Assembly (NCBI RefSeq): GCF_032191835.1
Contig: NC_083228.1
Coordinates: 70,866,001-70,930,000 of the forward strand
DNA: 64,000 nt
Reading direction: 5' to 3'
From: Heteronotia binoei
Taxonomy: Eukaryota
The notes under the pieces were generated by a model that ran no database searches, was not told where the DNA came from, and was given only the letters and a program-made list of their open reading frames with translations. The position numbers and the translations under genes were made by a program. How positions within the stretch are numbered: position 1 is the first letter of the stretch; each line of letters opens with the position of its first letter. Of the stretch, positions 24,179 to 56,123 are shown piece after piece.

Positions 24179-26022
24179 TTCAATACCTTCTCTCCTTTTA
24201 AATGTTATTGCTCATCTATCTCCATATTGCCTGTCTCCATATTGTCCATCTCCATACTCTCAGGGCTATTTCCCCCTTGTTCTCATAAGTGCCACACTCA
24301 ATCTTACACTCTCTCTCAACTAGAGATGTAGTTAAGAACTTATTTCTGTCTCTTCTCTTTCACCTAAACTATATACCAGGGAAGGGGAAATTTTGGTCCC
24401 TTTCACACCGTCACTTTATTTCACAGTGAATTAATTTCTCCCCATCTGTATTTAATTGGGATGGTAATGCTTCTTTTTTAATAGCAAATACATCTGCTTG
24501 AAAAACATACCTGGAACATTTCTTCTCTTTCAGATGGCGTTGTGCCTATGTGTTTGGTGTGAAAGTAATTTTCCTTACAAAGGGGTCACTGGATATTGAT
24601 AGTTGACTGACTGCTGAAAAACAAACAAACCACCTTCTACTCAGAGTTGCAAACATGGTAAAAAGTTCATATGAAAAAGAACTTTATGTTTCTGGAAACT
24701 ACTAAATTTTTTTCAAGGGTTATGACAGCCAGTCATAAAATTGCAGTTCAGTGGGTTGAATTAGTCACAAAATGGTAGCTTGTACAAAGCATTCTAAAGC
24801 AAGTCATCAGTGCTGAGGAGGAGAAACCTTTCCTCTGCCATTTTCCTAAAGTAAACCACCACTAACTCCTCAAATTGTAATTTTTCCTGCAGAGGAAAAA
24901 TATAAATCTATCTCTGGAAGCGGCAAATAGCAATTTTTCAGCTATTCACTAGCATGATTCTTTCCTGTCCAGAGTATGTGTGTCCATGTGTATATGAGAA
25001 GAAGGAGGAGGGGAAGAGGCAGATGGGAAAGGGTGCTAGTATGTGTGCATTCTCATTCACATGAAAGAGAAAGAGGAGAGAAGCTGATGCAATAGTTTTA
25101 AAGCGAAGGATAAGAAAGTGATTGCAGAAGTACTGGAAAAAGGAGAATGTAGTCTCTGCAAGCCCGCTGCGTGCCAGCGTGGCTGAGGGGACGATTTGCC
25201 TCCCTTCGGAGGGAGAGCGGCAACTTCGGCGCCTTTCTAGGCGCGTTTTGAGTGGGCGGGGTTTCAGCGCTGTTGCTGAAGCCCCGCTCTTGGCTGGGAC
25301 AGTCTTCCCGGCGTTTTCGGTGGGCGAGGAGCGTGCTTGCACGCTTCCGAGCCCGTCCGAGGTTGCTTTAGGCTGGGAGACTCGTGGAGCGTCGGAGCTG
25401 TGTTGGTCGCTTCGGGTGTGCTGCGGAGCGTCGGGGATCGTCGTGGGACATTTCTTGACGTTTTTATACAGTTTGTGGTGCCCTGGGCACTTAGTGTTGC
25501 CTGATTTGGGCTTTGCTGGATCCCTCTATTTTGGGTGCAATTGGCCAGTGGTGGGAGGTTGTTGTGTTATAGAGGCTCCGGTGCTTGAGCTTTTTGACCC
25601 CCCTCCCCCCCCTCTACCCTGTTGTGTGGGGTGTGCAGCTTAGTGGCTGTTTTAGCAAAAGTGAGGATGGTAGTGTGAGTGGGGCCGTGTGCCTGCCAGG
25701 GTCAGTCGGTTGTTACTGGCTGCCATTAGTGTTTGCTGGGGTGGTTGTTCTTGGCTTCACTGGGGTGGCTGGGCGGCCATTTTAAACTACCTCCTTCTTC
25801 ATTATCCCTGGCGGCCATCTTTGCAGGGATAAAGCGGCGGCCATTTTAGAGGGTTGTGGAATGGCAGCCATTTTAAGGTCGAGGCTTGGCCTGTTTGCCC
25901 TTCACCCCCCCCCCTTTTTTCTTAGTCTATTCGGGCTGGCTTTTTGTTTTAAGGGCTCGCTGCCTGGAGGATTGCACTTCTCCCTTGGAGTAGTTATCTA
26001 GTTGGGTGCTCTTCATTACAGC

Positions 26023-27401
26023 ATGTCGGGCCGCAAAAGTTCTGGGAAGCCTAAGGGGAAGCAGCCGGCCCCTAGGGCCCCCAGGCCGCCGCCGAAGCGC
26101 CCACCGCCACCCTCATCTTCAGATGAGGAAGGTGATGATGATGTCAATGCAGTCATTTTTCAGCGACTTCAGGCATTAGAGCGGGCATCGGGCCTTCCAC
26201 CTTCCCAGATGCCCAATAAGGGGTGGGTCTCCAAGAGGACATTTCAGGCCGACATCCTAACACGCTTGTCTTTTCTTGAGAGCAGATCAACAGCGGCTGC
26301 CGGTGGTGCTGTGGGGCATAGTGGCCTTGACGTTGGTGCTGGCTCATCCTCCGGTGCAGGTTGTGCTGGGTCTGCTTTGGTGCCCTCGGGGCCTTCTGGT
26401 AAGTTTGGGGATGGGTCTTTGTCTCACATGGGGCCTACATGGCCTTGGGGGGCCTGGGGGTCTGCTGGAACTAGTGGGGCTGGCTCTCCTCTAGGGGCCG
26501 CTTCTGCTGCGGGCTTAGATCAGCCTGGCAACTGGTTGGGGACTCAGGGTCAGTGGGGCATGATGGGCCCCTGGCCTGGTGTTGGACAGCAAGGGGCCGG
26601 AGGGGCTTGGCCTGGCTGCTGGGGTTTCCCTTCTCCGTATGGGGCGGTGCCCTTTAGTGCCATGCCTTCCGGTGAGGTCGCCTTACCGTTAGGCGATCAC
26701 TTGCTGCCTGCCACAAAGGAAAAAATTTTGAAGGGGAATAGGTGGATGTATTCTCCCTTTTATATAGAGAGTTAGAGAAAAAGGACAAGGAAGAGCTAGA
26801 CGACAAAGATAAGGAGAAGCTCAGGAAAAGGAAGGTTGAGCGGACCTGGGCCAATTGGCTCCCTGGGTTTCTTATTTATGCGGGGGTTATCGCACGGGCT
26901 CAGCCCTGGCGGGCTGCTGCCTTGATACAATACTTGGACATTGTGTACAAAGGGTACACGATGTTCAGTGGCCTGGCCTGGTGCCAGTATGACCAGGAGT
27001 TTAGAATGCGGGCCGCCTTGTACCCTTCACTCCCGTGGGATCGGATACACCAGCAGTTGTGGCTGCAGGTGATGTCACCGGCTCGGCCCAATTTGGGGGA
27101 GCGATCCGATAGCGGGCACCTTGTTTTGAAAGGTCCCGCTTCCCTGTCTGGTGCGCCCTCTTCCTCCCGCAGTGTTGCGGGGCAGGCGGTTCAACCCCGC
27201 TTGCTCTGCTGGGAGTTTGGGTCCCAAGGGGCTTGCAGTCGAAAGGACTGCCATTTTAAGCATGAATGCCCCTTGTGTGCTGGCCCGCACTCCTTCAGCA
27301 ACTGCCCCAGAGTCCGACCCCGCAAGGGTCAGAAAAAATCAGGCGGGGGCTCTTTCCAGCCTGGTAAAGGGTCCCAGCCCGATAAGGGTGGGGCCTCTTA
27401 G
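26023..27401 (+). pseudogene. gag: Ngaro-1 gag, disrupted at about 26733-26741
   Basis: Alignment to Ngaro-2 (RGEYVDVF) needs one more G in AAGGGGAATAGGTG and even then reads TAG; C-terminal half retains WANWLPGF..YDQEFRMRAA and the CCCH/CCHC cysteine cluster. Confidence 0.88.
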
Positions 27402-30400
27402 TGTGTGGCTACGTAGATACCCACGCAGGGAGGACAGTTGTTATCTTTTGAATGGTTTCACGTTAGGTTTTAGGATTCCTTTTCAAGGTCCTCGGGTACC
27501 AGCTTGGTCCAAGAACCTTAGTTCAGTTGTTGGTCTTGAACATATAGTTAGGGAAAAAATTGCTAAGGAGCTGGCTGAGGGCAGGATTTTGGGCCCCTAT
27601 ACCAGTCCTCCGGTTAGGAATTTTAGGGTTTCCCCGTTGGGGGTGGTGCCAAAGAAAGCACCTGGTGAATTTCGTTTGATTCACCACCTTTCTTATCCTA
27701 AGGGTTCATCGGTCAATGATGGCATACCTGAGGAGCTTTGCTCCGTTAGGTATACCTCTTTTGATCAGGCCGTGGGCGTCGTGCGACGCTGTGGTCAGGG
27801 GGCTGAGATGGCAAAATGCGATATCAAGTCGGCATTTCGCCTTCTCCCTGTCCACCCGGACGATTTTGAGTTGCTGGGCTTCTCGTTTGCGGGGCAGTAC
27901 TACATGGACAGGGCATTGCCTATGGGGTGCTCTGTTTCTTGCGCTGCTTTTGAGTGCTTCAGCACATTTTTGGAATGGGCTGTGCGTGAAAAAGTGGGCT
28001 TGCAGGAGGTCGTTCATTACCTGGACGACTACCTGTTTGTGGGCCCCGCAGGCTCAGGCCGCTGCGCTCAGCTGCTAGCTGGCTTTGTTGATTTGGCCGC
28101 TGAGTTGGGCGTGCCGTTGGCAGAGGAGAAGACAGAGGGCCCAGCCCAACGCCTTGTTTTTCTCGGGATTGAACTAGATACTCTGGAGCAGTCATCTAGG
28201 ATTCCTGAGCCGAAGCTGCTGGATTTGAAGGAAAGGATTAACTCCTTTCTGTGTAAAAAGAAGGTTACGTTGCTTGAATTGCAGCAGCTAGTGGGGCACC
28301 TTAACTTTGCCTGCAAAGTGGTCGCCCCGGGTAGGCCTTTTCTGCGCAGGTTCTGTGATGCTATGGCGGGCCTTCGCGCGCCTCATCACAAGACCAGGGT
28401 TACTAGCAGCATGAGGGAGGACCTGCGGATGTGGCAGGAGTTTTTGGAATCCTTTAATGGGATTTCATTTTGGAGAGAGGAACTGAAGCTTGAGGTGGAG
28501 CTTCAGGTCATGTCAGATGCTGCTGGGTCACTTGGTTTTGGAGTCTACTTCCGTGGACACTGGTGCATGGAAGAGTGGCCTGAGTCGTGGGTGCAGGCCG
28601 GTTTAAACAGGGACCTCACTTTTTTGGAATTCTTTCCTATTTTAGTTGCAGTTTGGCTGTGGGGGAATGATATGGTGAATTGCACCGTGCATTTTTGGTG
28701 CGATAACATGGCTGTGGTTCATGTTATTAATTCCCTTACATCCAAATCTTCACGGGTTATGAGGTTGGTACGGGCCTTCACTCTGTGTTGCCTGCGGCTT
28801 AACATTCTGTTTTTGGCCAAGCATGTTCCTGGGGTTAATAACGGGGTGGCTGACGCTCTCTCTCGTAAACAGATGGAGAGGTTTCGTCAGCTGGCCCCAG
28901 ACGCCGATCTGGATGCGGTGCCAATGCCCCAGGAGCTGTGGCTGATTGGAGAGCCGAGGCCTACAGAGCCATAGGTCTAGCCATTGCTCCCAGCACCAGG
29001 AGGTCTTATGAGCGTGCCGTGCGGCAGTTTGAGGACTTTAGGGCTGAGGTAGGGTATCGTATTGTTTGGCCCCTCCCAGTGGAGCAGTTGCTCCACTACT
29101 GTGTTTATCTAAGAGGTAAGGGACTGGCCGTGCGATCAATTCGGGGGCGTATGTCTGCGTTGGCCTTCGCCAGTAAGGCTTTGGGGTTCAAGGAAGAGAC
29201 AGCAGATTTTCGTATTCGAAAGATGCTGGAGGGGTGGTCCAGGGAGGCTGGGCCTGTGACTGATACTAGGGCCCCTGTGTCTCCTGAGATTCTTCGGGGA
29301 TTAAAAGGGGTATGGAGCGCAGTTTGTGCGTCTCCTTTTGAAGTAGTTTTGTTCCACGCAGCCTCTCTAGTGGCCTTTTTTGGGGCTTTGAGGGTTAGCG
29401 AGCTGGTGGCAAGCTCCAAGAGTGCTGTTTCCGGTAGGGCGTTGTTGCTTAGGGATGTTAAGTTGCTGGCGGGTAAGGTGGTCCTTACTGTCCGGCGATC
29501 CAAAACTGATCAGGTGGGCACGGGGACAGTGCTGCAGTTGGGTCCGTGTTCAGAGGTGGAGCTTTGCCCAGTGGCCGCATTGGTTGACTATTTGGCTGTG
29601 CGGGGAGGCTGCGCGGGATTGCTGTTTTGTCATGAGGGAGGTAGTCCCCTGACAAAGCATCAATTTTGGACAGTGACATCAAAGGCCTTAGCCCTGTTGG
29701 GGTTGTCCGGAATTAGGTTTGGCACCCATTCCTTTAGAATTGGGGCAGCTTCTACAGCTGCGGCCTTGGGTTATTCCGCTTCGGCCATCCAACGCCTTGG
29801 CCGTTGGCGTTCCCAGGCTTATAAAGGTTATATTCGCCCCATGCTCCGCTAACGGTTTTAGGGAGTAGCTTGGGGGCGTTGAGGTTTGGTTTATACAACT
29901 GTTTGTTTCTTTCTTTTAGATGCTGTGGTTCCTGGCCGGAGGAGCAGAGTTCTCATCTGCGGGCACAGTTATGTGTTCTGGGCGGCACATCAGGCTCGGA
30001 AAACTGCTGTTGGCTCACAGCTGGGGCTCAGCAAATATGTCACGATAGAGTGGAGGGGACGCCATGGGCTTCAGTGGCCCGGCTTGCTCTCCCTTTTGTT
30101 TCACGGGTCCGGGGCCCCTCCTCCGCAGGTATTGATTATTCACCTGGGAGGGAACGATCTCGGGCTGATTAAAGGCAAGGCGTTGATCTTGCAGGCCCGG
30201 GATGATTTCAGGTACATAAGGAACAGATGGCCTGGTACCATTATAGTTTGGTCGGCCATGATTCCACGCTTGGAGTGGTGTTGTGCCTGGAATCCAGCTG
30301 GGTTGGAGAGGGCTCGCTACCGAGCGAATAAGGAAATTCGCAAGGTTTTGGAGGGTGGCTTGGGTCACTATTTGCCCCATCCAGATATTTCTAAGGAATG

Positions 30401-30521
30401 TCCCGACCTCTACAGAGGGGATGGAGTGCATCTCTCGGAAAAGGGTAATATGCTTTTCCTGAGAGATTTACGGCAAGGGCTCTTGTCGGTTTGGGGTTTT
30501 TCTGTGGGTGCTAAGCCCTAA
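26023..30521 (+). CDS. Predicted spliced GagN-SGNH fusion, join(26023..26398,29920..30521), 325 aa
   Basis: Donor CTG|GTAAGT and acceptor TTTTAG|AT are both phase 1; junction reads GPS-D-AVVPGRRSRVLICGHS. Confidence 0.72.
27151..28974 (+). CDS. pol: Ngaro-1 reverse transcriptase / RNase H, +1 frame overlapping the gag end; true start unknown
   Basis: RLIHHLSYP, KCDIKSAFRLLP, LPMGCS, HYLDDYLF; RNase H SDAAG / LEFFP / WCDN / ADALSR. Confidence 0.95.
   Translation: MRPLPPAVLRGRRFNPACSAGSLGPKGLAVERTAILSMNAPCVLARTPSATAPESDPARVRKNQAGALSSLVKGPSPIRVGPLSVWLRRYPRREDSCYLLNGFTLGFRIPFQGPRVPAWSKNLSSVVGLEHIVREKIAKELAEGRILGPYTSPPVRNFRVSPLGVVPKKAPGEFRLIHHLSYPKGSSVNDGIPEELCSVRYTSFDQAVGVVRRCGQGAEMAKCDIKSAFRLLPVHPDDFELLGFSFAGQYYMDRALPMGCSVSCAAFECFSTFLEWAVREKVGLQEVVHYLDDYLFVGPAGSGRCAQLLAGFVDLAAELGVPLAEEKTEGPAQRLVFLGIELDTLEQSSRIPEPKLLDLKERINSFLCKKKVTLLELQQLVGHLNFACKVVAPGRPFLRRFCDAMAGLRAPHHKTRVTSSMREDLRMWQEFLESFNGISFWREELKLEVELQVMSDAAGSLGFGVYFRGHWCMEEWPESWVQAGLNRDLTFLEFFPILVAVWLWGNDMVNCTVHFWCDNMAVVHVINSLTSKSSRVMRLVRAFTLCCLRLNILFLAKHVPGVNNGVADALSRKQMERFRQLAPDADLDAVPMPQELWLIGEPRPTEP
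28938..29852 (+). CDS. Ngaro-1 tyrosine recombinase
   Basis: Catalytic set LRVSEL (R), SKTD (K), HSFRIG (H-x2-R), GRW (W), YKGY (Y). Confidence 0.95.
   Translation: MADWRAEAYRAIGLAIAPSTRRSYERAVRQFEDFRAEVGYRIVWPLPVEQLLHYCVYLRGKGLAVRSIRGRMSALAFASKALGFKEETADFRIRKMLEGWSREAGPVTDTRAPVSPEILRGLKGVWSAVCASPFEVVLFHAASLVAFFGALRVSELVASSKSAVSGRALLLRDVKLLAGKVVLTVRRSKTDQVGTGTVLQLGPCSEVELCPVAALVDYLAVRGGCAGLLFCHEGGSPLTKHQFWTVTSKALALLGLSGIRFGTHSFRIGAASTAAALGYSASAIQRLGRWRSQAYKGYIRPMLR
29920..30521 (+). CDS. Ngaro-1 SGNH/GDSL hydrolase (esterase) exon
   Basis: Block I ICGHS, block III LGGND, block V DGVH; preceded by GTTTGTTTCTTTCTTTTAG. Confidence 0.92.
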
Positions 30522-30540
30522 GTAGAGACTTGGCCTTAGT
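30510..30540 (+). other. Conserved RNA hairpin with AGAG loop at the SGNH stop (Ngaro-1)
   Basis: GCTAAGCCC(T)AAGT-AGAG-ACTTGGCCTTAGT; covaries with 49520-49550. Confidence 0.7.
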
Positions 30541-30899
30541 TGTGGCAGGTTCTACGGGGTTTATGGCACCAGGCGGCCTGGGGAGGACCAGTTAGCCTCC
30601 CCCTTTTGGGGAGTTAGGGGTCTGTCAGGATCTACCTTTGGTGTGGCCCGAGGTATGTGAATGCAGACTGTCCTGGAGACTCGATTGGATGGGTGCCTTT
30701 CGCTGAGACTCGCGTCTGGTGTTTGGGCCCTCCAGTGCGAGCCTTCCTGCTGGGTCTGCCTGGCGGGAGCTGTGGGTCACAGCTCCGGCTGGGGGACCGG
30801 GTCTCTCGCCCGCTGAAAAAGGCAGGGGAGCGGTCCGAGGAGACCCCTGGCCCTGACCTGGCTGCAGTTCGGTTGCCCTTGCCGAGGTTGTTTATTTTT

Positions 30900-30905
30900 A
30901 ATAAA
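30900..30905 (+). terminator. Poly(A) signal in the Ngaro-1 B repeat
   Basis: AATAAA about 60 nt before the element end, same position as in Ngaro-2. Confidence 0.75.
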
Positions 30906-32576
30906 AGTGGCCCATAGTTTCACCAATCCAATTGTGTCCGTCTCTTTATTCCGACTTGGGGGGCAACTACTTTTAACTGCATGGAGAGTATCTTTTGCCA
31001 TTTTTCAGAGTCACCCTTTGTCAAGTATAAAATGTAGTTTCATTCTAAGAAGTATTGTTAACTTCTCAGGGGACAAATTCAGCCATGCTGATTCAGCTAA
31101 CCATGATCACACATCCAAGCATTCAATACTGTATGAATTAATATCCCTGTTGCTAGTAACTGCTGGGCAACTGTAAAACAGTAATTACTGTGACTTCATT
31201 ATATTCTCTTTGATACAGGGAAATTTTGTAGATAATGTTTGTTCTTGATCAAGTATTTGCATTTAATTGTTATAGCAAATGTTCCGTGGAAGATGATTAG
31301 TTGTTGACCTTTCTTCATGGCTTCAAAAGTGTGAGGATGTTGGATCAACTCTCTTACTGTTATAGAAGATAAGGCTTTCAAGGCAATTATTACATGTAAA
31401 AGCTCTAGAAAATATTTCTTTCATATTTTGTCTTCTGTGTTTCTGACTTACAGTAACAGCTTCATATGCATATGCATAGTGCAGCTTGTGACTGCCATGC
31501 AACAGTATTGTGAGGATCAACTGGCAAGGCTGTCTTGGTAATGAAGAATAACCCTCTATTGTGTCATCTGTCCTAATATCACCATATCTGTGCACTGAAA
31601 TGTCACATGCTTTTAAACTTTTTAAGCAGGGGTGTTTTAGTGCCTTGACACTTATCAAATTACCAGGTACGAAAGTGTGGGGGGGAACCAGAAGTGTTTT
31701 TCTGTGTACTTCCCAATCCCACCTTGCTAATATTTATCCCAGAGCAAGAAACTGTGTAGCCACATGCATTGTTTGATTGACATCTGAGAAAAACAGCTAA
31801 TGCTGATTACGCTGATGATGACAGTGGCCAATACAACATTGGGAGAGATTGCACCACTGTGGGAGACAAGAGATGTTTTATGAATACCGTGTAGGCAGCA
31901 GCTAGAGGCATGGGGTAAAAAGACTCTGGAATTAAGTTATTCTGTATTTGCAGTTTGTGGCCAGGAAACTCAGCTCATGAAATTCTGTAGCCTGCCTCTC
32001 TTCTGAGTCTCTGTGGAAATGGACAAAGAGTCCTTTCCAGGGGTTGTTTTGTAGAAAAATAAGCGATGGAGCTCATCCAGGGATTGTTATGCAGCTGCAC
32101 CTATTATTCAATGAACAAGGTGGGAAGAAGGAGGTGGAACTCTCAGAAAGGTTCAGAAGCTGTGCTCCTGTGAGCATTCGCTGAATCCAAGGACTGGTCC
32201 TTTCTAAGTAAGTCAGAAATAATTATAGTAGCTGTCATTTCCCCAGAAAGCACTTTCCTAACATAGGGCACGTTCTTTGGGGGGCCATAACTCAGACCAC
32301 ATAAATCCAATCTTCACCAAATCTGGACAGCAGGCAGAGAGTCAACCAGAGCCCTCCTGTGAGATTGGTATCTCTAACTTGCACAGTATCCATTCTATGT
32401 GCTCCTGAACTTTAGGAACCTACATGTACTGGTTCTCCAGGAGGCATTTATAGCCAAGTCTTAATGAGATAAACTCTCAAATAATTCCTTGGCAGTCATC
32501 CTGAAGCTACTTACTCTTCAACTGACAGCTGATGATGTTTCAGGAGTCTAGCACTTTTTCTCTCTTGCAACTCTAA

Positions 32577-32842
32577 TGGTGTTTTCCCACAGAGCTTACC
32601 TCGGAGCGACGTCCCTCTTCACTGCGCAGCGTCTGCGCGGATTTCCCACCAACTGCTCCGCATAACCAGGAAGTGCCAGACCTTTTGCGTCACAGATGTG
32701 AACCGCTAAAACCCAGTTTACGTTAGTGACGCAAAAGCCGCAGCTCTTCCTGGTTATGCGGAGCAGTTGGTGGGAAATCCACGCAGACGCTGCGTGGTAA
32801 AGAGGGACGTCTCTCCAAGGTAAGCTCTGTGGGAAAACACCC
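32577..32842. mobile_element. PIF/Harbinger MITE, same family as 3588-3854
   Basis: Long TIRs; TSD TAA. Confidence 0.88.
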
Positions 32843-34099
32843 TAAGTGTCTCTGATAGTATCAGTGCTGCAAGAGTATTGGTGATCTAGATGGGCTGGGA
32901 AGCCTTGTTTACTGCTTCAGAGCTTCAGTTTCAGCTGTAGGTTGTGACTCCAGATCAGTTGGTAAGCCAGTCTCTTGTTGTTCTCCTCCTGGCTCAGAAT
33001 CAGCTGTAGCGGGGTGTTCAATTAATGGCTAAGAGCTGGCTGATGAATCCAAGTTGTCATTGAGCACAGACTGACAACACTGTGCCTGTCAAAAAGGTCA
33101 TTTTGACAGGTGCAGGTTCAGGAGTGAACAGAACAGATTCTGTTCAATCTAGAGACATCAAAGTTACAGGGAACCTCCCTAGGATGCTTCTCTAAATGCC
33201 CTCCAAGTTGTTGCTTTGAAGTTTTGCAAACATTTTGATTGAGGACATTTTGTCCAGGAGGACAGTCTATCTGGTTATATATCCACTCACAAACTGGCAC
33301 AAACTTCCATGAAAAGTTTGAAAATTTGTGGAAAGTTCATGCTAGTTGCCACAAACTTGACTTCATGAAGCATGAACCAGCCAAAATTCATCATGAACTT
33401 TAGTTTATGATCCCCCCTTCCCCCAAACAGCACCCTCCCTAAGTATCCCTCCCAAATTTGCAGGGATTTCCCATAAGAAGAATCATAACGTTCTTTCCAT
33501 GATTGGCCCATCCATTATGGTGGGTTTTTTTAATTTCCTGCAGAGTTTCTTTCCCATAATTAAACTTTTCTCCCAGTTATTCAAACCTTCAAACCCATGT
33601 CTATAGATTATATCTTTTCAGTGACTGGACTTAATCCACCTAGATTAAGCTTTCCTTAAATAAGCAAGTTCTGTTCTTTGGTGGTAGGTTTTAATCATTT
33701 GGTTTTGTACACTTATCGTTGTAGGGGGGAAATCCTCTTATCTATGGAGCATGAAATAGCTAGTTGTATAACCAAAACAAAAGAGCTGCTGATTAACTAG
33801 TGCATTAAAGCTGTTTACAGGCCTTGTATCAGTATTTCTCAGCTTTTGTTAGGTACTTCAGACATTCCTGCTTTGTAACATCCAGTATTAAATTGTCCTT
33901 TAGGCAGATACAGGTAGTTAATACCCTGCAGTGTCCTTATGTAAACAGTTTGCACCAATACACACCTTTCAAATTGGTTATTTAGAGAACACATGCAAGT
34001 AGATTTTCCAATGACTTACAAATATACCCTATTCTGTGGCGGCTTGCGGGTGCTAAATAGCTTTTTAATATATGTGAGTTTGAAGCCAATGGTGAAAAT

Positions 34100-48085: not shown

Positions 48086-48380
48086 ATAGAAATGAAAGGT
48101 AACAATTCAAACGTATAAACAAAGCCTGAACAGCAAATTAGCATGTAACATGATAAAGATGTTTTAAGAGATGGAGAGACAGAATAGGAATAACAAATTA
48201 CATTTCTAAGGTTAAAAGTTGTTTGGTTTTAATTAAGGGGAAACAACAGTGAAGCAATAAATATGTCAAAATAGGAGATAAATGTGTTAAAGTATCCTTT
48301 CTAATTGTTGGAAGTTAACTGCAACTCTGTTGCTATGCTCCATTTGTTTTCTCTGAAGCATGGAGATCACAAACAGCATT

Positions 48381-48776
48381 TGCCCCCCCAGTCGGAAAGA
48401 AGAGGCAGACACAGTTGTTGGGTTTAAAACCGGGCCGCTTTATTAACATTAACAAAAATAACTGGCAGGGGGAAGGAAACAGACCAGACAAGCCCTGGGG
48501 TCAACACCTGGACCCCGCCTTGTCCAAAGGGCGAGCCACCCTGCCCCCAGCACAAACCCGCCGTGATCGGGTTGTAACTGAGCGGCCAGGCCTCCAGCCA
48601 TCACCAACCGGGCTGGAACAATCCCCATGGAAAGATCCACCCAGGTGAGGCTCCCTGTGTTCTGCATCACCGTACTGAGCCGTTTAGCCCATCTACGGTT
48701 CCTGCAGACACCGCACCAAAGGTGCTAGGCCATAGGTGCTCCCCTGGAAAACCCTGTGGCCAAACCTAATCCAGCC
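48381..48776 (-). repeat. Ngaro-2 repeat B2 (396 bp), AATAAA at 48444-48439
   Basis: Matches 49121-49516 with one mismatch seen (48517 G / 49257 A). Confidence 0.95.
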
Positions 48777-48938
48777 TGCGACCAAACTAGAACACAACAG
48801 AAGCTAACCTAATAGGCAATACAAGGTAGGCGAAAAACACCCCAGCAAAGGCCAATTGTGCGGGAGTGAAAAAATTCCTACCTGGCCCCAAAAGGCAACC
48901 GGTATACACCTGTACTGCCAATGGGAAGGGTGGGCGGG

Positions 48939-49120
48939 CAGAGAGCCGAAATCAAACTGCGTGCTAGGGCGGGAGCCGGGGCTTATATAGCCCCGCCTCC
49001 ACGCCCGGCCAAGCACCCGTATATCGGGTGATTCTTCCACCCCTCCCTCCTTCCGGAGGGGCAAAGACGGCCCCCAGCCTATGGCCTGCAAGCAGGCTTG
49101 GCTGGGAAGGGGCCGAACCT
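48939..49120 (-). repeat. Ngaro-2 repeat A2 (182 bp)
   Basis: Matches 54922-55103 with one mismatch seen. Confidence 0.95.
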
Positions 49121-49516
49121 TGCCCCCCCAGTCGGAAAGAAGAGGCAGACACAGTTGTTGGGTTTAAAACCGGGCCGCTTTATTAACATTAACAAAAATA
49201 ACTGGCAGGGGGAAGGAAACAGACCAGACAAGCCCTGGGGTCAACACCTGGACCCCACCTTGTCCAAAGGGCGAGCCACCCTGCCCCCAGCACAAACCCG
49301 CCGTGATCGGGTTGTAACTGAGCGGCCAGGCCTCCAGCCATCACCAACCGGGCTGGAACAATCCCCATGGAAAGATCCACCCAGGTGAGGCTCCCTGTGT
49401 TCTGCATCACCGTACTGAGCCGTTTAGCCCATCTACGGTTCCTGCAGACACCGCACCAAAGGTGCTAGGCCATAGGTGCTCCCCTGGAAAACCCTGTGGC
49501 CAAACCTAATCCAGCC
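49121..49516 (-). repeat. Ngaro-2 repeat B1, abutting A2 (circle-junction sequence GGGCAA/GGTTCGG)
   Basis: Direct copy of B2 at an offset of 740 bp. Confidence 0.95.
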
Positions 49517-49519
49517 ACC

Positions 49520-49550
49520 GCCAATGCCAAGCCTCTGCTTAGGCATTAGC
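49520..49550 (-). other. Conserved RNA hairpin with AGAG loop at the SGNH stop (Ngaro-2)
   Basis: GCTAATGCC(T)AAGC-AGAG-GCTTGGCATTGGC, 13 pairs with one bulged U. Confidence 0.72.
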
Positions 49551-50141
49551 GCCCCACCGGGTGGCCCAGAGCCAACCGCACCCCCTGCCGGATTTCATCC
49601 AAAAAGGCCCGGTTACCCAAATTAGATAAGTGAACGCCATCGGGCCGATACAGGTCAACTTGCTCGACCCGTATGGCCGGATGAGGGAGGTATATTCCTA
49701 ATCCCTCCTCCATGGCCTTCTGAATGGCCCTATTGGCCTTACGTCTGGCCCGCTCGATTCCCCCCGGGGAAATGGCGTACCTCCACACCCTACGCGGCAA
49801 AATTGCGGACCATACCAATACGACCCCAGGCCACCTGCGACGAATTTCGCGGAGGTCAGCCAACGCCTGCTGGGACAGAGCCTTCCCCTGCAGCAGACCC
49901 AAGTCGTTCCCGCCCAGGTGAACGACAAGAATGTGTGGAGGTAATGCCTTCCGCTCCAGGAATAAGAGTGGCATGATGCCGGGCCAGCGCAGCCCCCGAC
50001 GACCCAGCCATTCGACAGTGGCCCATTCACTGAGACCCAGCTGGGTGCCCACAGGAGACCGCCTGGAGAAATGGGCAGCCCAAAAAACCATGCTGTGCCC
50101 GCAGATGAGAACCCGCCGTCTCTCACCCCGAGCCACAGCAC
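49546..50141 (-). CDS. Ngaro-2 SGNH hydrolase exon
   Basis: ICGHS, LGGND, DGVH; preceded by GCTGAC-TGTTGTTTGTTTTTTCAG. Confidence 0.92.
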
Positions 50142-53100
50142 CTGAAAAAACAAACAACAGTCAGCAAAGTGCCCAACAGTTAACCAACCCCCCCCCACCT
50201 ACCTGTTAGGCGACCAGGGGGCGTACATAAGACCTATAAGCCGCCGAGCGCCAACGACCGATACGCTGAATGGCCGAGGGCGTGTAGCCCATAGCAGCAG
50301 CTGTGGAAGCCGCCCCAATCCGGAAGGAATGCGTCCCAAATTTGACGCCAGTGAGACCCAATCGAACCAGGGCCTTACTTGTGACAGACCAAAACTGATA
50401 TTTGGTAAGAGGAGAACCGTCATCATGCCTGAGAAAGGGACCTAGGGCCTCGCCCCTGAGTTGGGCGTAACGGCGAACGGCCCTGACCGGACATAATTCC
50501 TGCAAAGCACACATGCCGATCGTGATGACGGTTCCCCTCTGCCTCTGATCAGTCTTGGACCTGCGAATCGTCAGAACCAGCTGACTATTGGTGATTTTTA
50601 CATCTCCGGATTGGAGCGCCCTACCAGACGTGTCAGCTTTTGACTGCACTACGAGCTCACTTACGCGCAGGGCCCCAAAGAAGGCCAACAACGAGGCAGC
50701 GTGGAATAGCGCCGACTCAAATGGGGAGGAACAGACCCTGGACCAACCCCCAAACAATCCGCGGAGGACTGACGGGGATATGGGCTGTCTGTCATCTACC
50801 TGACGCACCCGCTCACGAGACCACCCTTCAAGCATCTTCCTAACCCTAAAATCTCCGGTGGGCTCCGTGAGGCCCCGAGCCTTTCTTACAAAGGCCAACG
50901 CTGCCAATTGTCCCTTTATGGTTTTTAGCCCCAGGCCTCTTTCCCTTTGATGCACGCAAAATTGCATGATGTGCTCAACTGGGATTGGCCAGGAATCCGG
51001 GAGTGCTACAGCCCCCCTAAACTCACCAAATTGGGCAGTCGCTCTGGCATATGCCCTCCTCGTACTAGGTGCTAGCGCCAACTGAATGGCCCTACCGGCT
51101 TCTTGTTCCCAAGCCTCCAGAGTTCCGCGGGCATTTCCGCCGGACATGAATCTGCCTCTGGGGCCAACAGCCGGAAACGCTCCATCTGTTGGCGAGACAG
51201 AGCATCCGCCACACCATTGCAAACCCCCGGTACGTGCCTAGCCAGGAATAATACATTCAACCGGAGGCAACGCAGGGTAAAAAACCTAACCAGATTCATG
51301 ACCGCAGCCGATTTTGAAGTCAAGGAGTTGATAACATGTACTACAGCCATGTTATCACACCAAAACAGAACTGAATGGTTGGCAAGCTGCTCTCCCCACA
51401 GGCAAACGGCCACCAAGATGGGGAAAAATTCCAGAAACGTGAGGTCTCTACAGAGCCCGCTTTCCAACCAGTCAGCAGGCCATTGCTCGGCACACCAATG
51501 GCCCCTGAAGTATACCCCAAAACCACTAGCCCCGGAAGCATCCGAAGAAATTTGAAGCTCAGCCTCAATCTTAAGTTCCTCCCTCCAAAAGGAAACCCCA
51601 TTGAAGGAGTCAAGGAACTCCTCCCAAACCTCCAAATCCGCTCTCATTCCGGCATTAACACGGACCCTATGGTGAGGGAGGCGCAGCCGGCCCATGGCGT
51701 CACAAAAGCGTCGCAAAAAGGCCCTGCCTGGGGCCACCACTTTGCAAGCAAAGTTAAGGTGGCCCACCAACTGCTGTAATTCTAAAAGGGAAACCTTCCG
51801 CTGCCCCTTCAAGGCGGCCAACCGATTTCTAAGGTCGGAGACCTTATTCTCCGGTAAACGTGATGTCTGCTGGAGAGTGTCCAGCTCAATACCTAGAAAA
51901 GTAAGAACCGTGCTGGGGCCCTCGGTTTTTTCGTGAGCCAGCGGCACACCAAGCTCGAGGGCCAACCCCTGAAAGGAGCGTAACAACCTGTCGCATTGAC
52001 CCGATCCTGCGGGACCTACAAAAAGGTAATCGTCAAGGTAATGCGCCGTGTCGTTAACCCCCGTCCTAACCCTGAGCGCCCATTCCAAAAAGGAACTGAA
52101 TCGCTCGAACGCTGCACAGGAGATGGAACATCCCATCGGCAAAGCCCGGTCCATGTAGAATTTCCCTTCAAAGGAAAAACCCAATAACTCAAAATCATCG
52201 GGGTGTACCGGCAAGAGGCGAAATGCAGACTTAATGTCGCATTTTGCCAACTCCGCCCCCATCCCGCATCCGCGAACTACTTTGACCGCCTGGTCAAAGG
52301 AAGTATAACGGACTGAACAAAGTTCCTCAGGGATAGCATCGTTCACCGAAGCTCCCCTGGGATAAGACAAATGGTGTATAATCCTATACTCACCGGGTGC
52401 CTTTTTGGGAACCACCCCCAAAGGGGATACCCTCAATGTGGGCACAGGCGGTACATCAAAGGGGCCAAGGACCCTGCCTTCCTGGCATTCTTTAGCAATT
52501 TTTTCCCGAACCACATGTTCGAGTCCAACCACCGATTTAAGGTTGGGAGCTACAAAGGGGGCCCTACGCCCCCTGTACGGGATCCGAAACCCCAGCGTAA
52601 AACCGTCCAGTAAATACCTGGCATCGGCCCTACAGGGATATGCGACCAATAACCTACTGAGAGCCGGAAGGCGGATGGGGCTGGGCCCCTTTTCCAGGTG
52701 GCGGTGCACCGCCACCGCCGCCTCCGGGACGCTTACCGCCCGGTCCGGGCTTGGATCTACTGCAGGCTGACAATGAGTGGGGCCCACTGCACAGGGGACA
52801 TTCGTGACGGAATTTACAGGGCTTCCTGGGACAAGCCCCCTTGGAAGCGAATTCCCAGCACAACAACCGGGTTTGAACCGGCTGGCCCGCGGAAACGCGG
52901 GCAGCTGGGGAGGCCTGCTGTTGCTGTGATCTCTGCACCAGGTGGCCGCTGTCGGACCTATCCCCAGCATTTGGTTTTGCTGGAGCCATCAGCTGCAACC
53001 ACAGCTGCTGGTTTATTTGGTCCCACGGCATTGCCGGATTGACGGCAGCCCGCATCCGGAAGGCTTCGTCATACTGCAGCCAAGCTGCCCCGGCGAAGTC

Positions 53101-54183
53101 CGTATAAGCCCTATAGATTATGTCCACGTATTGAAAGAGGGCGGCCGCCCTAGCCGGCTGCGCTCTTGCAATGACCCCGGCGTAAATCAAAAAACCGGGC
53201 AACCAGTTTGCCCAAGACCTATCGATCTTCCTACGCTTTAGTTTTTCCTTGTCCCTGTCGTCCAGCTCGTCCTTACTTTTTCTCTCGAGCTCTCTGAACA
53301 GGAGACCAAAAACATCCACGTACTCCCCGCGGAAAATTTTCTCCCGCGTGGCCGGCGTCAGATGATCCCCCAACGGCAACGAAGTGTCGCCGTAGGGAAA
53401 GGCGTGAAAGGGGATGCTAGCATAGGGATCTGGGGGGTAAAACCACCCGCCCACTTGAGCTGCGGGCCATGGCCCCCGCAACTGCGCCCCCTGCAGGCCA
53501 CCCCAAGGCAAAAAGCCAGGTGTGGGCAGTGAGGTGGGGGCTGCATGCGGTACCCCAGCGCCCACCTGTTGGCCCATAGGGGCAGGAACTGCGTTTGACG
53601 ACAAACTGGAGGTATGTGGCCCCCAAGCCCATGGCTGAGCGGAACCCACCTGCTCACTGGCGCCTAGCCACCCAGGTCCCCATCCCAACCCACTCGGCCC
53701 CGGCAAATGAGGGGTCGGCTGGGCGAAGCCCCAAGGCCACCCGGGAACTGGCAGAGAAATAGGCTTACCACCATCACCAGGAAAGGCGCCCGGACCTCCA
53801 GAAGGCTGCGGTCCACCACTTCCCGATGCCCCTGCACCCGATGGCGCACCTGATGGGCCTTCGCCAGGGTCCTCATCTTGATCAGGTTCCAACGGCGCAT
53901 CGGGCTCCGACTGCCCCTCCTGTAAAGCAGACAGCCTTGCCAGTAATTCAGTTTCAAAAGTTAGCCGGGCCGACCTTCCAGTGGCACGGCGACGGCCCTC
54001 CCAGATGGGTGCACCTCTGGCCACACGCTCCTGTTCCAGAGCTTCCAATTGACTGATAATGGCGAGACGAACTCGCTCATTCTGATCCTGCTCCTCAACA
54101 GGGGCACCTTGCTGGCCCCTCCCCCGAGGTGGGCGGGCGGGCTGCTTGCCCTTAGACTTGCCCTGTCCCTTTTTAGGAGCCAT
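49546..54183 (-). CDS. Predicted spliced GagN-SGNH fusion, complement(join(49546..50141,53769..54183)), 336 aa
   Basis: Donor GTG|GTAAGC and acceptor TTTCAG|GT are both phase 1; junction reads GDG-G-AVARGERRRVLICGHS. Confidence 0.72.
50206..51222 (-). CDS. Ngaro-2 tyrosine recombinase
   Basis: LRVSEL, SKTD, HSFRIG, GRW, YRSY. Confidence 0.95.
   Translation of the reverse strand: MQWCGGCSVSPTDGAFPAVGPRGRFMSGGNARGTLEAWEQEAGRAIQLALAPSTRRAYARATAQFGEFRGAVALPDSWPIPVEHIMQFCVHQRERGLGLKTIKGQLAALAFVRKARGLTEPTGDFRVRKMLEGWSRERVRQVDDRQPISPSVLRGLFGGWSRVCSSPFESALFHAASLLAFFGALRVSELVVQSKADTSGRALQSGDVKITNSQLVLTIRRSKTDQRQRGTVITIGMCALQELCPVRAVRRYAQLRGEALGPFLRHDDGSPLTKYQFWSVTSKALVRLGLTGVKFGTHSFRIGAASTAAAMGYTPSAIQRIGRWRSAAYRSYVRPLVA
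51072..52970 (-). CDS. pol: Ngaro-2 reverse transcriptase / RNase H; true start unknown
   Basis: HYLDDYLF, KCDIKSAFRLLP; RNase H SDASG / LEFFP / WCDN / ADALSR. Confidence 0.95.
   Translation of the reverse strand: MLGIGPTAATWCRDHSNSRPPQLPAFPRASRFKPGCCAGNSLPRGLVPGSPVNSVTNVPCAVGPTHCQPAVDPSPDRAVSVPEAAVAVHRHLEKGPSPIRLPALSRLLVAYPCRADARYLLDGFTLGFRIPYRGRRAPFVAPNLKSVVGLEHVVREKIAKECQEGRVLGPFDVPPVPTLRVSPLGVVPKKAPGEYRIIHHLSYPRGASVNDAIPEELCSVRYTSFDQAVKVVRGCGMGAELAKCDIKSAFRLLPVHPDDFELLGFSFEGKFYMDRALPMGCSISCAAFERFSSFLEWALRVRTGVNDTAHYLDDYLFVGPAGSGQCDRLLRSFQGLALELGVPLAHEKTEGPSTVLTFLGIELDTLQQTSRLPENKVSDLRNRLAALKGQRKVSLLELQQLVGHLNFACKVVAPGRAFLRRFCDAMGRLRLPHHRVRVNAGMRADLEVWEEFLDSFNGVSFWREELKIEAELQISSDASGASGFGVYFRGHWCAEQWPADWLESGLCRDLTFLEFFPILVAVCLWGEQLANHSVLFWCDNMAVVHVINSLTSKSAAVMNLVRFFTLRCLRLNVLFLARHVPGVCNGVADALSRQQMERFRLLAPEADSCPAEMPAELWRLGNKKPVGPFSWR
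52654..54183 (-). CDS. gag: Ngaro-2 Gag-like ORF1 (509 aa from the ATG)
   Basis: Basic N-terminus, two amphipathic helices, W/P/G-rich linker, WANWLPGF..YDEAFRMRAA, C-x7-C-x4-C-x3-H followed by C-x2-C-x3-H-x4-C. Confidence 0.92.
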   Translation of the reverse strand: MAPKKGQGKSKGKQPARPPRGRGQQGAPVEEQDQNERVRLAIISQLEALEQERVARGAPIWEGRRRATGRSARLTFETELLARLSALQEGQSEPDAPLEPDQDEDPGEGPSGAPSGAGASGSGGPQPSGGPGAFPGDGGKPISLPVPGWPWGFAQPTPHLPGPSGLGWGPGWLGASEQVGSAQPWAWGPHTSSLSSNAVPAPMGQQVGAGVPHAAPTSLPTPGFLPWGGLQGAQLRGPWPAAQVGGWFYPPDPYASIPFHAFPYGDTSLPLGDHLTPATREKIFRGEYVDVFGLLFRELERKSKDELDDRDKEKLKRRKIDRSWANWLPGFLIYAGVIARAQPARAAALFQYVDIIYRAYTDFAGAAWLQYDEAFRMRAAVNPAMPWDQINQQLWLQLMAPAKPNAGDRSDSGHLVQRSQQQQASPAARVSAGQPVQTRLLCWEFASKGACPRKPCKFRHECPLCSGPHSLSACSRSKPGPGGKRPGGGGGGAPPPGKGAQPHPPSGSQ

Positions 54184-54921
54184 CACTAACAGGTGACAAG
54201 CAATGAAGCAAAGTTGGGGCTAACTGGCCAGTCAGGGGGCCCTTTCCACACCACCCCCCTCCCAGTAGGAGGAGATGAATGCCCCCACCAAAGAGGTGGT
54301 GCAACTACCCCTCCCCAGCCCCACACAACACCAAACTTATCAAAAGGCCGTGCAGGAAAGGAAAAATCTGGTGTCTTCTGCAGGCAAAACGGAGACAGTT
54401 ACACTGCCCCTAGAACCTTCCAACCCACACCGGACGGGAAGGAATGAGGAGATAGGAAGCTACCCAAGGCACAAGCTCCTGCCTTCCAGGCCAGTTAAAA
54501 GGAAACAGAGGGAGGGGGGGGGTGTATTTCAGCGACTGGAAACCCGGCCCACCCCCTTAGGAAGGAAACCCCGGGAGAAGGCCACCACCAATATGCAGCC
54601 AGCAGACCCGGCTCCTTTTACTGGGGCCGTTCCACGCCGCCCTCTAGCCTCCCCCCAGACCCTCCGATAATCGTGCTGTTCGCCGCGCTACTCAGCCGCC
54701 GCAAGCGCGTCCCCGTGGCAACGCCTCCCAGCCGCCCAACAGCTGATTCCTGAAGTGCCGCCTGTAAATCGCCGCCGCAAGCGCGCCTCGCCGCGCCAAG
54801 AGCCCGCCGACCAGCTGGTCCTCAGAAGCTCGCCGCGCCTCTACCGTCGACCGCTGCACGCGCTCGTCACCCAAGCTGCCCAGGCCTAGCCCTGCAGCAG
54901 CCGACCAATGTGGCTCTCGCA

Positions 54922-55103
54922 CAGAGAGCCGAAATCAAACTGCGTGCTAGGGCGGGAGCCGGGGCTTATATAGCCCCGCCTCCACGCCCGGCCAAGCACC
55001 CGTATATCGGGTGATTCTTCCGCCCCTCCCTCCTTCCGGAGGGGCAAAGACGGCCCCCAGCCTATGGCCTGCAAGCAGGCTTGGCTGGGAAGGGGCCGAA
55101 CCT
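54922..55103 (-). promoter_or_regulatory. Ngaro-2 repeat A1 with Pol II core promoter
   Basis: TATATAA at 54972-54966 inside GGGGCT..AGCCCC; Inr-like GCAGTTT with the A at 54941, 31 nt downstream. Confidence 0.8.
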
Positions 55104-56123
55104 TTTTTCTTTGTTGGGGTGGGATGCAGTGTTATTTATGTCAGAAAGAGACATTTTAATTTTTATTGCATTGCATTACAATCACTATTCCAATATACCA
55201 GGGTTTCCCAAACTTTTTTCCCATGGCCTGGTTACATTTACACTTCTCCTTCATGGCCCATGAAAATTCAGGGGTGGAGCCAGGAGACTTTGGGGGTGGA
55301 GCTGGGAGATAGGAAATGATGTCATTTCCTGTGATGTTACTTCCAGGTCAAGGGCCAAGAGATGTCACTTCTAGGGCACACTGAATCAAAACTCCACCTC
55401 TTCCTGTGATGTCATTTCCAGGGCACTCCCCCAAACCTGCCTCTTCTTCTGAAGTAACTTCATTTTCAGAAAAATTTATATGAAATCCATGCTGAGCCAA
55501 GTGGGCGGTCTGCAACTTGTTAATACATTCCCAGGGTCCTCTCTTTCCACTCCAACACCTGCATGCACCTATCTGTTTGTGTATTCTTCTCCAGCTTGCC
55601 AGCACTCCTAATGCCCATGTTCAATTGCCTGCACCACCTACACACCCCTTCCTCAACAGCACTGGCCATTGTATGAAGTTGGGACTGCTGTTGCCATTGC
55701 CATCAGGAATGCCAGCACTGTGTACCACCCATAGTGGGCCCTGACAGCTGCTCTACCTCAAAATATGCTGATGCATTTAGTAGGCTGCTAAATCCTACCT
55801 TCAGCTGCTACTACTGGAACCCTGCCTCAAGCTACAACCAAGCTCACTTGGTTTCAAACAAATCTTTTGACAGTTATTTTTCAAACTTTTCCTTGGCTGA
55901 AGCACTAGGAAATTGCTGTGAAAGGTAGCAGAGAATTGTACTGCAATTAATGAATTAATTTCAAGTTATATGAAGTCCATACAAGCTTATCTGCTGCTAT
56001 CCCAAAAAGGATATTTATGAGAGACTTGCAGCTTTTTACTGGCTGTGTTTCCCATGCCTTTAAAAGCAACCTTTAATTAAGCAGTTATTAATCAACACTT
56101 TGTCAAAGATGGAGAAGCTCCTT

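What the first reader, a model, noticed from the sequence alone, without database searches (positions are those of the whole stretch)
26023..30521. Hidden spliced gene in Ngaro-1: Gag N-terminus joined to an SGNH esterase across a 3.5-kb intron
Seen: the SGNH ORF has no AUG before its catalytic Ser; the first in-frame ATG lies after both GHS and GGND. It is preceded by a pure pyrimidine tract ending TAG (AG at 29918-29919) with a 34-nt AG-free zone. A perfect donor CTG|GTAAGT lies at 26398/26399 in the gag linker. Both sites are phase 1, so removing 26399-29919 (3521 nt) gives an open 325-aa frame of 125 Gag residues plus 200 hydrolase residues. Known: SGNH ORFs occur in some Ngaro elements, and some LINE ORF1 proteins (CR1/L2 clades, e.g. 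zebrafish ZfL2-1) combine a coiled coil with an SGNH esterase. Inference: the element builds an ORF1p-like helical-domain/esterase protein by alternative splicing, sharing its N-terminus with Gag so it could co-assemble into particles. I know of no description of this splicing, but I could not search. The gag frameshift at about 26735 lies inside the intron, so this product is still intact.
Basis: partly seen in the sequence, partly recalled or inferred. Interest (0 to 1): 0.92.

Follow-up and report, generated by a model that had tools for sequence, protein, structure and literature searches.

The report
Ngaro retrotransposon splices Gag onto enzymes
A lizard-type Ngaro jumping gene most likely uses retrovirus-style RNA splicing to join the first 125 residues of its Gag protein to its esterase, and also to its recombinase, which would explain how two genes that lack start codons get made.

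Summary
Donor CTG|GTAAGT lies at 26398|26399. The T-rich acceptor ends in AG at 29918-29919. Both are phase 1, and the joined frame is open for 325 aa. The SGNH frame has no ATG before its catalytic Ser.

The splicing reading is well supported, but indirectly:
- The same donor and acceptor, in the same phase, occur in window copy 2, in four other lizards and in a frog, inside otherwise unalignable sequence.
- RefSeq carries many 320-366 aa GagN::SGNH models over full Ngaro elements.
- One 1,677-nt intronless contig, from a probable RNA library, encodes such a fusion.

New here: the same donor also fits a conserved acceptor at 28872|28873, in front of the start-less recombinase frame. That join gives a 451-aa GagN::YR product, and 449-504 aa models of this kind are annotated in four lizards. 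No slippery heptamer supports the frameshift proposed in the literature for YR.

RNA reads of this species gave no test, because exon 1 had zero coverage.

Other copies in this genome were already flagged by this scan, with the same esterase conclusion. The recombinase acceptor was not in the notes I retrieved. I found no paper describing either splice.

Verdict: a real, probably undescribed expression strategy. Direct junction reads are still missing.

The parts
25152..30966 (+). Ngaro copy 1 (A1 repeat, internal region, B1 repeat). The 3' A2-B2 repeats are missing.
   Evidence: DNA homology to the Heteronotia element runs from 25142 to 30966. An RNA-library contig joins 30966 back to 25152, which is the B1-A2 junction of other copies. 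No direct repeat was found in 24500-32500.
26023..26398 (+). Shared 5' coding exon: gag codons 1-125 plus 1 nt. It encodes a basic tract, an acidic SSSDEE tract, two short helices and a Gly/Ser linker.
   Evidence: Homologous N-termini are seen on the fusion models. Helices 36-54 and 72-92 appear in the AF2 model of the relative P0001.
26396..26404 (+). 5' splice donor CTG|GTAAGT, phase 1.
   Evidence: Top-scoring of 253 GT sites. G|GT.(A/G)G is invariant in 6 elements within an unalignable linker.
26735..26775 (+). Interruption of gag (frame change and stop). It lies inside the intron.
   Evidence: ORFs 26002-26775 and 26742-27401 are in different frames. Copy 2 has a continuous 509-aa Gag.
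27151..28974 (+). RT/RNase H ORF, intronic in both spliced forms.
   Evidence: Pfam RVT_1. 81% aa identity to the Heteronotia element.
28853..28872 (+). Acceptor 1, in front of YR: ...GCTCTCTCTCGTAAACAG|ATGGAG. It lies inside the RNase H ADALSRxQ codons.
   Evidence: The homologous site is used by the Hemicordylus 449-aa and Pogona 493-aa models. CAG|AT is conserved in 8 elements. The L009 mini-exon starts exactly here. It ranks 10th of 280 AG sites.
28873..29852 (+). YR exon. With exon 1 it gives an open 451-aa GagN::YR frame.
   Evidence: The YR frame opens only at 28869, and its first ATG is at 29151. Pfam Phage_integrase.
29900..29919 (+). Acceptor 2, in front of SGNH: a T-rich tract ending TAG.
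   Evidence: Ranks 2nd of 280 AG sites. A T-rich tract plus YAG is conserved in 8 elements within a non-coding spacer.
29920..30521 (+). SGNH esterase exon. With exon 1 it gives an open 325-aa GagN::SGNH frame.
   Evidence: Pfam Lipase_GDSL_2 scores 35.5 bits against a cut-off of 32.9. The motifs GHS, GGND and DGVH are present.
48380..55104 (-). Ngaro copy 2, about 67% nt identical to copy 1. All four ORFs are open, and it has split direct repeats.
   Evidence: Repeats 54922-55104 = 48939-49121 (99%) and 49120-49419 = 48380-48679 (100%).
53769..54183 (-). Copy 2 shared exon 1 (gag ATG at 54183). Donor GTG|GTAAGC follows 53769, phase 1.
50206..51185 (-). Copy 2 YR exon behind acceptor ...CGCCAACAG|ATGGAG. 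The fusion is 464 aa.
49546..50141 (-). Copy 2 SGNH exon behind acceptor ...GTTTTTTCAG|GTGCTG. The fusion is 336 aa.

Best explanation
The locus is a Ngaro-type tyrosine-recombinase retrotransposon. The family uses one 5' splice donor inside gag, after codon 125 (26398|26399). It uses two alternative 3' acceptors. One is at 28872|28873, in the RNase H tail just upstream of the recombinase. The other is at 29919|29920, just upstream of the SGNH esterase. Unspliced RNA would serve as genome and as gag(-pol) message. Spliced subgenomic RNAs would encode GagN::YR (451 aa here) and GagN::SGNH (325 aa here). Both carry the same N-terminal module of a basic tract, an acidic tract and two helices. This explains why neither downstream frame has a usable AUG. 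Shown here: the sites, their phase, the open fusions, their conservation, and the matching database models. Inferred: that the spliceosome uses the sites in vivo, and that the shared module targets the enzymes to Gag particles or to the nucleus. Copy 1 keeps every signal but shows no sign of expression. Copy 2 obeys the same rules.
For: (1) Sites, phase and open frames are confirmed.
(2) Window copy 2 was not chosen through any gene model. It has a phase-1 G|GTAAG donor at the homologous Gly codon and both acceptors, giving 464-aa and 336-aa fusions.
(3) Anchored comparison of 6-8 elements (two window copies, Heteronotia, Eublepharis, Hemicordylus, Paroedura, a Logan contig, the frog Eleutherodactylus) shows three things. 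G|GT.RG is invariant in an unalignable linker. CAG| is invariant at the YR site. T-rich tract plus YAG| is conserved in the YR-SGNH spacer.
(4) RefSeq models cover full elements with gagC, RT and YR in the intron. Introns are 3522, 3615 and 3528 nt, against 3521 here.
(5) Hemicordylus and Pogona loci each carry both isoforms from one start. Eublepharis P0045 (YR) and P0020 (SGNH) share a near-identical exon 1, differing at one of about 145 residues, and both switch domain after ...VEPE.
(6) GagN::YR models exist in Eublepharis, Anolis, Pogona and Hemicordylus.
(7) L009 is a 1,677-nt contig with a continuous 394-aa GagN::SGNH ORF. Its middle segment begins exactly at the conserved post-acceptor sequence ATGGAGCG.TTC.GGCTG. 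Neighbouring run accessions are rRNA-depleted RNA libraries.
(8) In 6 of 8 elements there is no ATG before the catalytic Ser.
(9) No X_XXY_YYZ slippery heptamer occurs in any of six RT/YR overlaps. One to three in-frame stops separate YR from SGNH.
Against: There are no junction reads from this species. In three raw RNA runs, of which about 6% was read, depth over 25494-26675 was zero. Nearly all laid reads were only 90-95% alike, so they came from paralogues. I could not inspect the RNA-seq support behind the gene models. They may also propagate between species through protein evidence. That SRR6291285 is an RNA library is inferred from neighbouring accession numbers, not checked. The YR acceptor lies in conserved RNase H codons, so protein constraint could explain part of its conservation. 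It is also a mediocre site on a crude score (rank 10 of 280). Two of the eight elements do have ATGs upstream of the esterase domain. The scoring matrices were written from memory.
Confidence: 0.77

Rival explanations
1. Only the esterase is made by splicing. The recombinase is translated by a programmed -1 ribosomal frameshift in the RT/YR overlap, as proposed in the field's review.
For: Poulter and Butler 2015, as quoted in PMC13003380, propose this. YR is in the -1 frame relative to RT/RH, with a 106-208 nt overlap. The YR acceptor is a weak site and sits in conserved codons.
Against: No canonical slippery heptamer occurs in six overlaps. The YR frame opens within 4 nt of the AG in copy 1. 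The same AG starts the mini-exon of the SGNH message in Pogona, in the frog and in L009. GagN::YR models are annotated in four lizard genera.
Confidence: 0.12
2. The splice-like motifs are not used. The SGNH ORF would be translated some other way: read-through of the YR stop, non-AUG or internal initiation, or an internal promoter. On this view the database fusions are artefacts of gene predictors, which must attach a start-less ORF to the nearest ATG exon.
For: YR and SGNH share one genomic frame in all six elements checked. In three of them only a single stop separates the two. Predictors favour canonical GT-AG pairs that keep frames open. No junction reads were obtained here.
Against: Three in-frame stops separate the ORFs in copy 1, and two in copy 2 and in the frog. 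GT and AG are conserved in sequence that is otherwise saturated, independently of any predictor. The intronless contig L009 is not a prediction. Mini-exons of 45 and 102 nt are unlikely to come from ab initio prediction.
Confidence: 0.07
3. The fusions are domesticated host genes derived from Ngaro, not products of active elements.
For: They are annotated as ordinary 'uncharacterized protein LOC...' genes in RefSeq.
Against: They occur at dozens of loci per genome with near-identical products. Each spans a full element with RT and YR in the intron. Copy 2 is flanked by 99-100% identical split direct repeats, which marks a recent insertion.
Confidence: 0.03

Closest known systems
Retroviral and errantiviral env subgenomic mRNA (for example avian leukosis/Rous sarcoma virus, where the donor lies within gag and Env starts with a few Gag codons; gypsy/ZAM env). 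From my own knowledge.
   Same: One 5' donor in or near gag and downstream acceptors in front of 3' genes that lack their own start. Unspliced RNA doubles as genome and as gag-pol message. Alternative acceptors give several products, as in complex retroviruses.
   Different: The element is a tyrosine-recombinase (DIRS-order) retrotransposon without env. The spliced products are enzymes. A 125-residue structured part of Gag is kept as a shared N-terminal module, not a handful of codons.
ZfL2-1 ORF1p, the esterase class of LINE ORF1 proteins (PMC3905857; PDB 4c1a and 4c1b).
   Same: An N-terminal helical or self-association region, then a linker, then an SGNH esterase. 4c1b is the best solved match by sequence (profile E=1e-6, next SGNH hit 0.011). 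It also has the highest identity among the fold matches listed.
   Different: ORF1p is one continuous ORF of a non-LTR element. Here the architecture is assembled by splicing, and the N-terminus is shared with a zinc-knuckle Gag. Dimerisation, lipid binding and activity are shown for ZfL2-1 and untested here.
[quoted passage not shown]
   Same: The order gag, RT/RH, YR, SGNH hydrolase. Split direct repeats. No methyltransferase. Hydrolase 'with no proven function'.
   Different: Published descriptions treat the genes as four overlapping ORFs and suggest frameshifting for YR. No paper among those I could search mentions splicing.
PAF acetylhydrolase Ib catalytic subunits, bacterial GDSL acylhydrolases and sialate O-acetylesterases.
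   Same: SGNH fold with the Ser, Gly, Asn and His blocks (Foldseek TM by target 0.6-0.75).
   Different: Only 14-22% identity. They are cellular enzymes with no Gag-derived N-terminus.

Membership tests
Ngaro (DIRS-order YR retrotransposon) | DIRS-type RT/RNase H followed by a tyrosine recombinase | tested here: met
   Pfam RVT_1 at E=2e-10. Phage_integrase at E=1e-5 (25.8 bits, just under the 27.1 cut-off) plus the SAM-like N-domain. YR homologues reach E=1e-120.
Ngaro (DIRS-order YR retrotransposon) | Split direct repeats A1 ... B1 A2 B2 | tested here: inconclusive
   Copy 2 has them: a 183-nt A pair at 99% and a 300-nt B pair at 100%, although 259 nt lie between A2 and B2. Copy 1 has no repeat and ends at B1. 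A contig from another copy joins 30966 to 25152.
Ngaro (DIRS-order YR retrotransposon) | No methyltransferase domain; SGNH ORF after YR in tetrapod members | tested here: met
   Pfam finds only Lipase_GDSL_2 downstream of YR.
SGNH/GDSL hydrolase | Conserved blocks: GxS, Gly, GxND and DxxH | tested here: met
   GHS, RGRHG, GGND and DGVH are all in the ORF. They are invariant or nearly invariant in the 18-sequence alignment. Pfam is above its cut-off. The fold has pLDDT above 90.
SGNH/GDSL hydrolase | Hydrolytic activity | not testable with these tools
   This needs an enzyme assay.
Spliceosomal intron / subgenomic mRNA | GT-AG ends, a pyrimidine tract, and frame continuity | tested here: met
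Spliceosomal intron / subgenomic mRNA | Splice sites conserved above their surroundings across family members | tested here: met
   (8 elements, lizards plus a frog).
Spliceosomal intron / subgenomic mRNA | Junction-spanning RNA reads at this locus | tested here: inconclusive
   Exon 1 had zero depth, and the laid reads came from paralogues.
Spliceosomal intron / subgenomic mRNA | An intron-less transcript in any member | tested here: met
   L009 carries a continuous 394-aa fusion on a 1,677-nt contig. That the run is an RNA library is inferred from neighbouring accessions.
LINE ORF1p, esterase class | A single ORF1 of a non-LTR retrotransposon, upstream of an APE/RT ORF2 | tested here: not met
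   The element encodes a DIRS-type RT plus YR, and the fusion needs splicing. It resembles ORF1p in architecture only.

The most novel reading that the evidence does not exclude
Ngaro elements may be 'complex' retroelements. A single donor embedded in gag and a set of alternative acceptors, with lineage-specific mini-exons, would put the same Gag N-terminal module (basic tract plus helices) on every accessory enzyme. Recombinase and esterase would then travel with Gag particles or enter the nucleus together. This would replace the frameshift model for YR. It would also recreate by splicing the coiled-coil/esterase design that CR1/L2 LINEs encode as ORF1p.
Probability: 0.5. Interest if true: 0.8.

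Novelty: new variant of a known kind. Interest (0 to 1): 0.68.

Why it matters
How DIRS-order elements express their recombinase and accessory genes has been an open question. The standing suggestion is ribosomal frameshifting, and the hydrolase is described as having no proven function.

A conserved splicing programme would give that question a concrete, testable answer. It would extend retrovirus-like subgenomic splicing to a retroelement order where I found no description of it. It would explain dozens of 'uncharacterized protein' and 'xerD homolog' models in reptile and amphibian RefSeq annotations. It would also point to convergence with LINE ORF1p esterases, which strengthens the idea that lipid or membrane chemistry matters for retrotransposition.

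Tried and rejected
- Junction reads in this species. Exon 1 had no depth, and the reads were mostly 90-95% alike, so the test was uninformative. The only long skip seen was 26985 to 30116, with AG..GC ends and 24 foreign letters. It is not a splice.
- A third acceptor for RT. The best-scoring AG in copy 1 (first exon base 27173) is in phase with the donor and with the RT frame. No in-phase site exists at the RT-frame opening in copy 2, Eublepharis, Hemicordylus or the frog, so it is probably chance.
- A second donor after the YR acceptor in copy 1, which would give a mini-exon as in Pogona, the frog and L009. Only poor GT sites are present, so the gecko-type elements probably splice directly.
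- The -1 frameshift for YR. No slippery heptamer was found in six overlaps.
- Stop read-through from YR into SGNH. One to three stops intervene.
- Logan contig L005 turned out to be an unspliced, degenerate copy.
- L010 is the unspliced gag of a family related to L009. It is too diverged in the linker to fix L009's donor.
- Goodwin and Poulter 2004 and Poulter and Butler 2015 are not held in the library.
- A paper search for SRR6291285 found nothing.
- Two protein look-ups, for P0028 and P0050, were not on record.


Full report
**Observation**

The window holds a gag, RT/RNase H, tyrosine-recombinase (YR), SGNH-hydrolase element on the + strand (ORFs, Pfam).
- The donor CTG|GTAAGT has its last exon base at 26398.
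- The acceptor has a 12-nt pyrimidine run followed by AG at 29918-29919. The previous AG is at 29882.
- The gag ATG is at 26023, so the donor is phase 1.
- Joining 26023-26398 to 29920-30521 gives an open 325-aa frame.
- The SGNH frame is closed by TGA at 29880. Its first ATG comes after both GHS and GGND.
- On rough matrices written from memory, the donor ranks first of 253 GT sites. The acceptor ranks second of 280 AG sites.

**Relatives**

A search with the esterase part returned RefSeq 'uncharacterized protein' models of 320-347 aa from Eublepharis, Heteronotia, Elgaria and Hemicordylus.
- Their N-termini (M..KKG..KGKQPAKR..SSSDEE..helix) match this element's Gag N-terminus.
- I fetched three loci and mapped the exons. 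Each gene spans a full element, with gagC, RT and YR in the intron.
- The junctions are GAG|GTAGGT...TTTTTAG|AT in Heteronotia, ATG|GTAAGT...TTCTTAG|GT in Eublepharis, and TTG|GTGAGT...CTTACAG|AC in Hemicordylus.
- All three are phase 1. The introns are 3522, 3615 and 3528 nt, against 3521 nt here.
- Cluster listings show dozens of such XP_ models. They extend to Anolis, Pogona, Rhineura and several amphibians.

**A second acceptor**

The Hemicordylus locus also carries a 449-aa isoform. I reconstructed it as the same exon 1 joined to an acceptor inside the RNase H 'ADALSRxQ' codons, just upstream of YR.

The window has the homologous site, GCTCTCTCTCGTAAACAG|ATGGAG, with AG at 28871-28872.
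- The YR frame opens only at 28869.
- It has no ATG until 29151.
- It is phase-compatible with the gag donor, giving an open 451-aa GagN::YR frame.

A search with the YR part found 449-504 aa GagN::YR models in Eublepharis, Anolis sagrei, Pogona and Hemicordylus. Eublepharis P0045 (YR) and P0020 (SGNH) share a near-identical exon 1, differing at one of about 145 residues, and switch domain at the same point, after ...VEPE. The Pogona locus carries both isoforms from one start. Its SGNH isoform fits a three-exon structure with a 102-nt mini-exon that begins at the YR acceptor. The frog model uses a 45-nt mini-exon from the same acceptor.

**An unbiased replicate**

A second copy on the minus strand is about 67% identical in nucleotides and was not selected through any gene model.
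- It has an open 509-aa Gag, with its ATG at 54183.
- It has a phase-1 donor GTG|GTAAGC after 53769, at the homologous Gly codon.
- It has both acceptors, with first exon bases at 51185 and 50141.
- The fusions are open for 464 and 336 aa.
- It is flanked by split direct repeats that are 99-100% identical.

Anchored comparison of 6-8 elements shows the following:
- G|GT.RG is the only invariant stretch in an unalignable linker.
- CAG| is invariant at the YR site.
- A T-rich tract plus YAG| is conserved in the non-coding YR-SGNH spacer.
- Six of the eight elements have no ATG before the catalytic Ser.

**Transcript evidence**

Reads of the same species label gave no test.
- Depth was zero over 25494-26675, which includes exon 1.
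- Depth was 0-2x over pol.
- Depth was higher only at the 3' end.
- Nearly all reads were 90-95% alike, so they came from paralogues.

Elsewhere, Logan contig L009 (SRR6291285, 1,677 nt) carries a continuous 394-aa ORF. It runs Gag N-terminus, then about 63 nt that begin exactly with the conserved post-acceptor sequence ATGGAGCG.TTC.GGCTG, then the esterase. In an unused frame, that middle segment still spells the RT tail MERFRLLA. This marks its origin in the RT/YR overlap.

Runs SRR6291293, SRR6291295 and SRR6291301 are rRNA-depleted metatranscriptomes of amphibians from PRJNA418053. L009 is therefore probably a spliced mRNA. I could not verify the library type of that exact run.

**Rivals**

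The review quoted in PMC13003380 proposes a -1 frameshift for YR. None of six RT/YR overlaps holds an X_XXY_YYZ heptamer.

YR and SGNH share a genomic frame in all six elements. Even so, one to three stops intervene, three of them in copy 1. Read-through is therefore unlikely here.

A strong in-phase acceptor near the RT start (27173) is not conserved, so I rejected it.

**Protein**

An AlphaFold model of the Eublepharis fusion shows helices at 36-54 and 72-92, a disordered 94-144 linker, and an SGNH fold with pLDDT above 90.
- The fusion profile hits the ZfL2-1 ORF1p esterase 4c1b at E=1e-6. The next SGNH structure is at 0.011 (identity of 4c1b confirmed).
- Foldseek gives generic SGNH neighbours.
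- The resemblance to LINE ORF1p is real at the level of architecture and closest solved sequence match. The element itself is not a LINE.

**Literature and earlier notes**

Searches for Ngaro with SGNH, splicing or hydrolase, and for DIRS with splice and gag, found no description of this splicing. The primary Ngaro papers are not held in the library.

This scan has flagged the same esterase splice on other copies of this genome, and follow-up agents reached the same view. Those notes are not independent evidence. The YR acceptor was absent from the notes I retrieved.

**Verdict**

The splicing reading is supported by conservation, by independent annotation and by one intronless contig. It broadens to a one-donor, two-acceptor programme.

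Still missing are junction reads from a defined RNA sample and any biochemical test. Copy 1 itself has a broken gag, lacks its 3' repeats, and shows no detectable expression.

Noticed in passing
window 48380-55104 (minus strand): The second Ngaro copy has all four ORFs open and split direct repeats that are 99-100% identical, so it looks like a recent insertion. About 259 nt lie between A2 and B2, which is not the textbook layout.
   Followed up: partly
window 30966 joined to 25152 (RNA-library contig of run X2): A contig joins the 3' end of copy 1 back to its 5' start, with TGAG between. This is the B1-A2 junction expected in complete copies, or in tandem or circular forms. It fixes the limits of copy 1, which lacks A2-B2.
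   Followed up: partly
window 28869-30521, and loci L002, L006, L007, L008: The YR and SGNH frames are in the same genomic reading frame in all six elements checked. They are separated by one to three stop codons. The esterase may once have been a C-terminal extension of YR.
   Followed up: no
L011 4490-4591; L007 5247-5291; L009 about 963-1025: In Pogona, in a frog and in the L009 contig, the esterase message appears doubly spliced. A 102-, 45- or roughly 63-nt mini-exon starts at the YR acceptor. Each length is a multiple of three. Gecko-type elements lack a good second donor.
   Followed up: partly
window 30419-31000: RNA read depth is 10-30x over the element's 3' end, against 0-2x over pol. 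Depth also steps up near 28843. This could reflect subgenomic RNAs, 3' bias, or simply better mapping of conserved parts of paralogues.
   Followed up: no
window 27150-27175: The best-scoring acceptor-like site in copy 1 sits at the start of the RT frame, in phase with the gag donor. It is not conserved in four other elements.
   Followed up: yes
window 32570-32859, 3573-3868, 42309-42571: An unrelated repeat of about 280 nt, with a palindromic self-match, occurs just 3' of copy 1 and at two other places in the window.
   Followed up: no
window 29890-29905, and the same place in copy 2, L002 and L005: A conserved ..(C/T)NAC TGTT.. motif lies about 20 nt upstream of the SGNH acceptor AG in the gecko-type elements. 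It is placed like a branch point.
   Followed up: no
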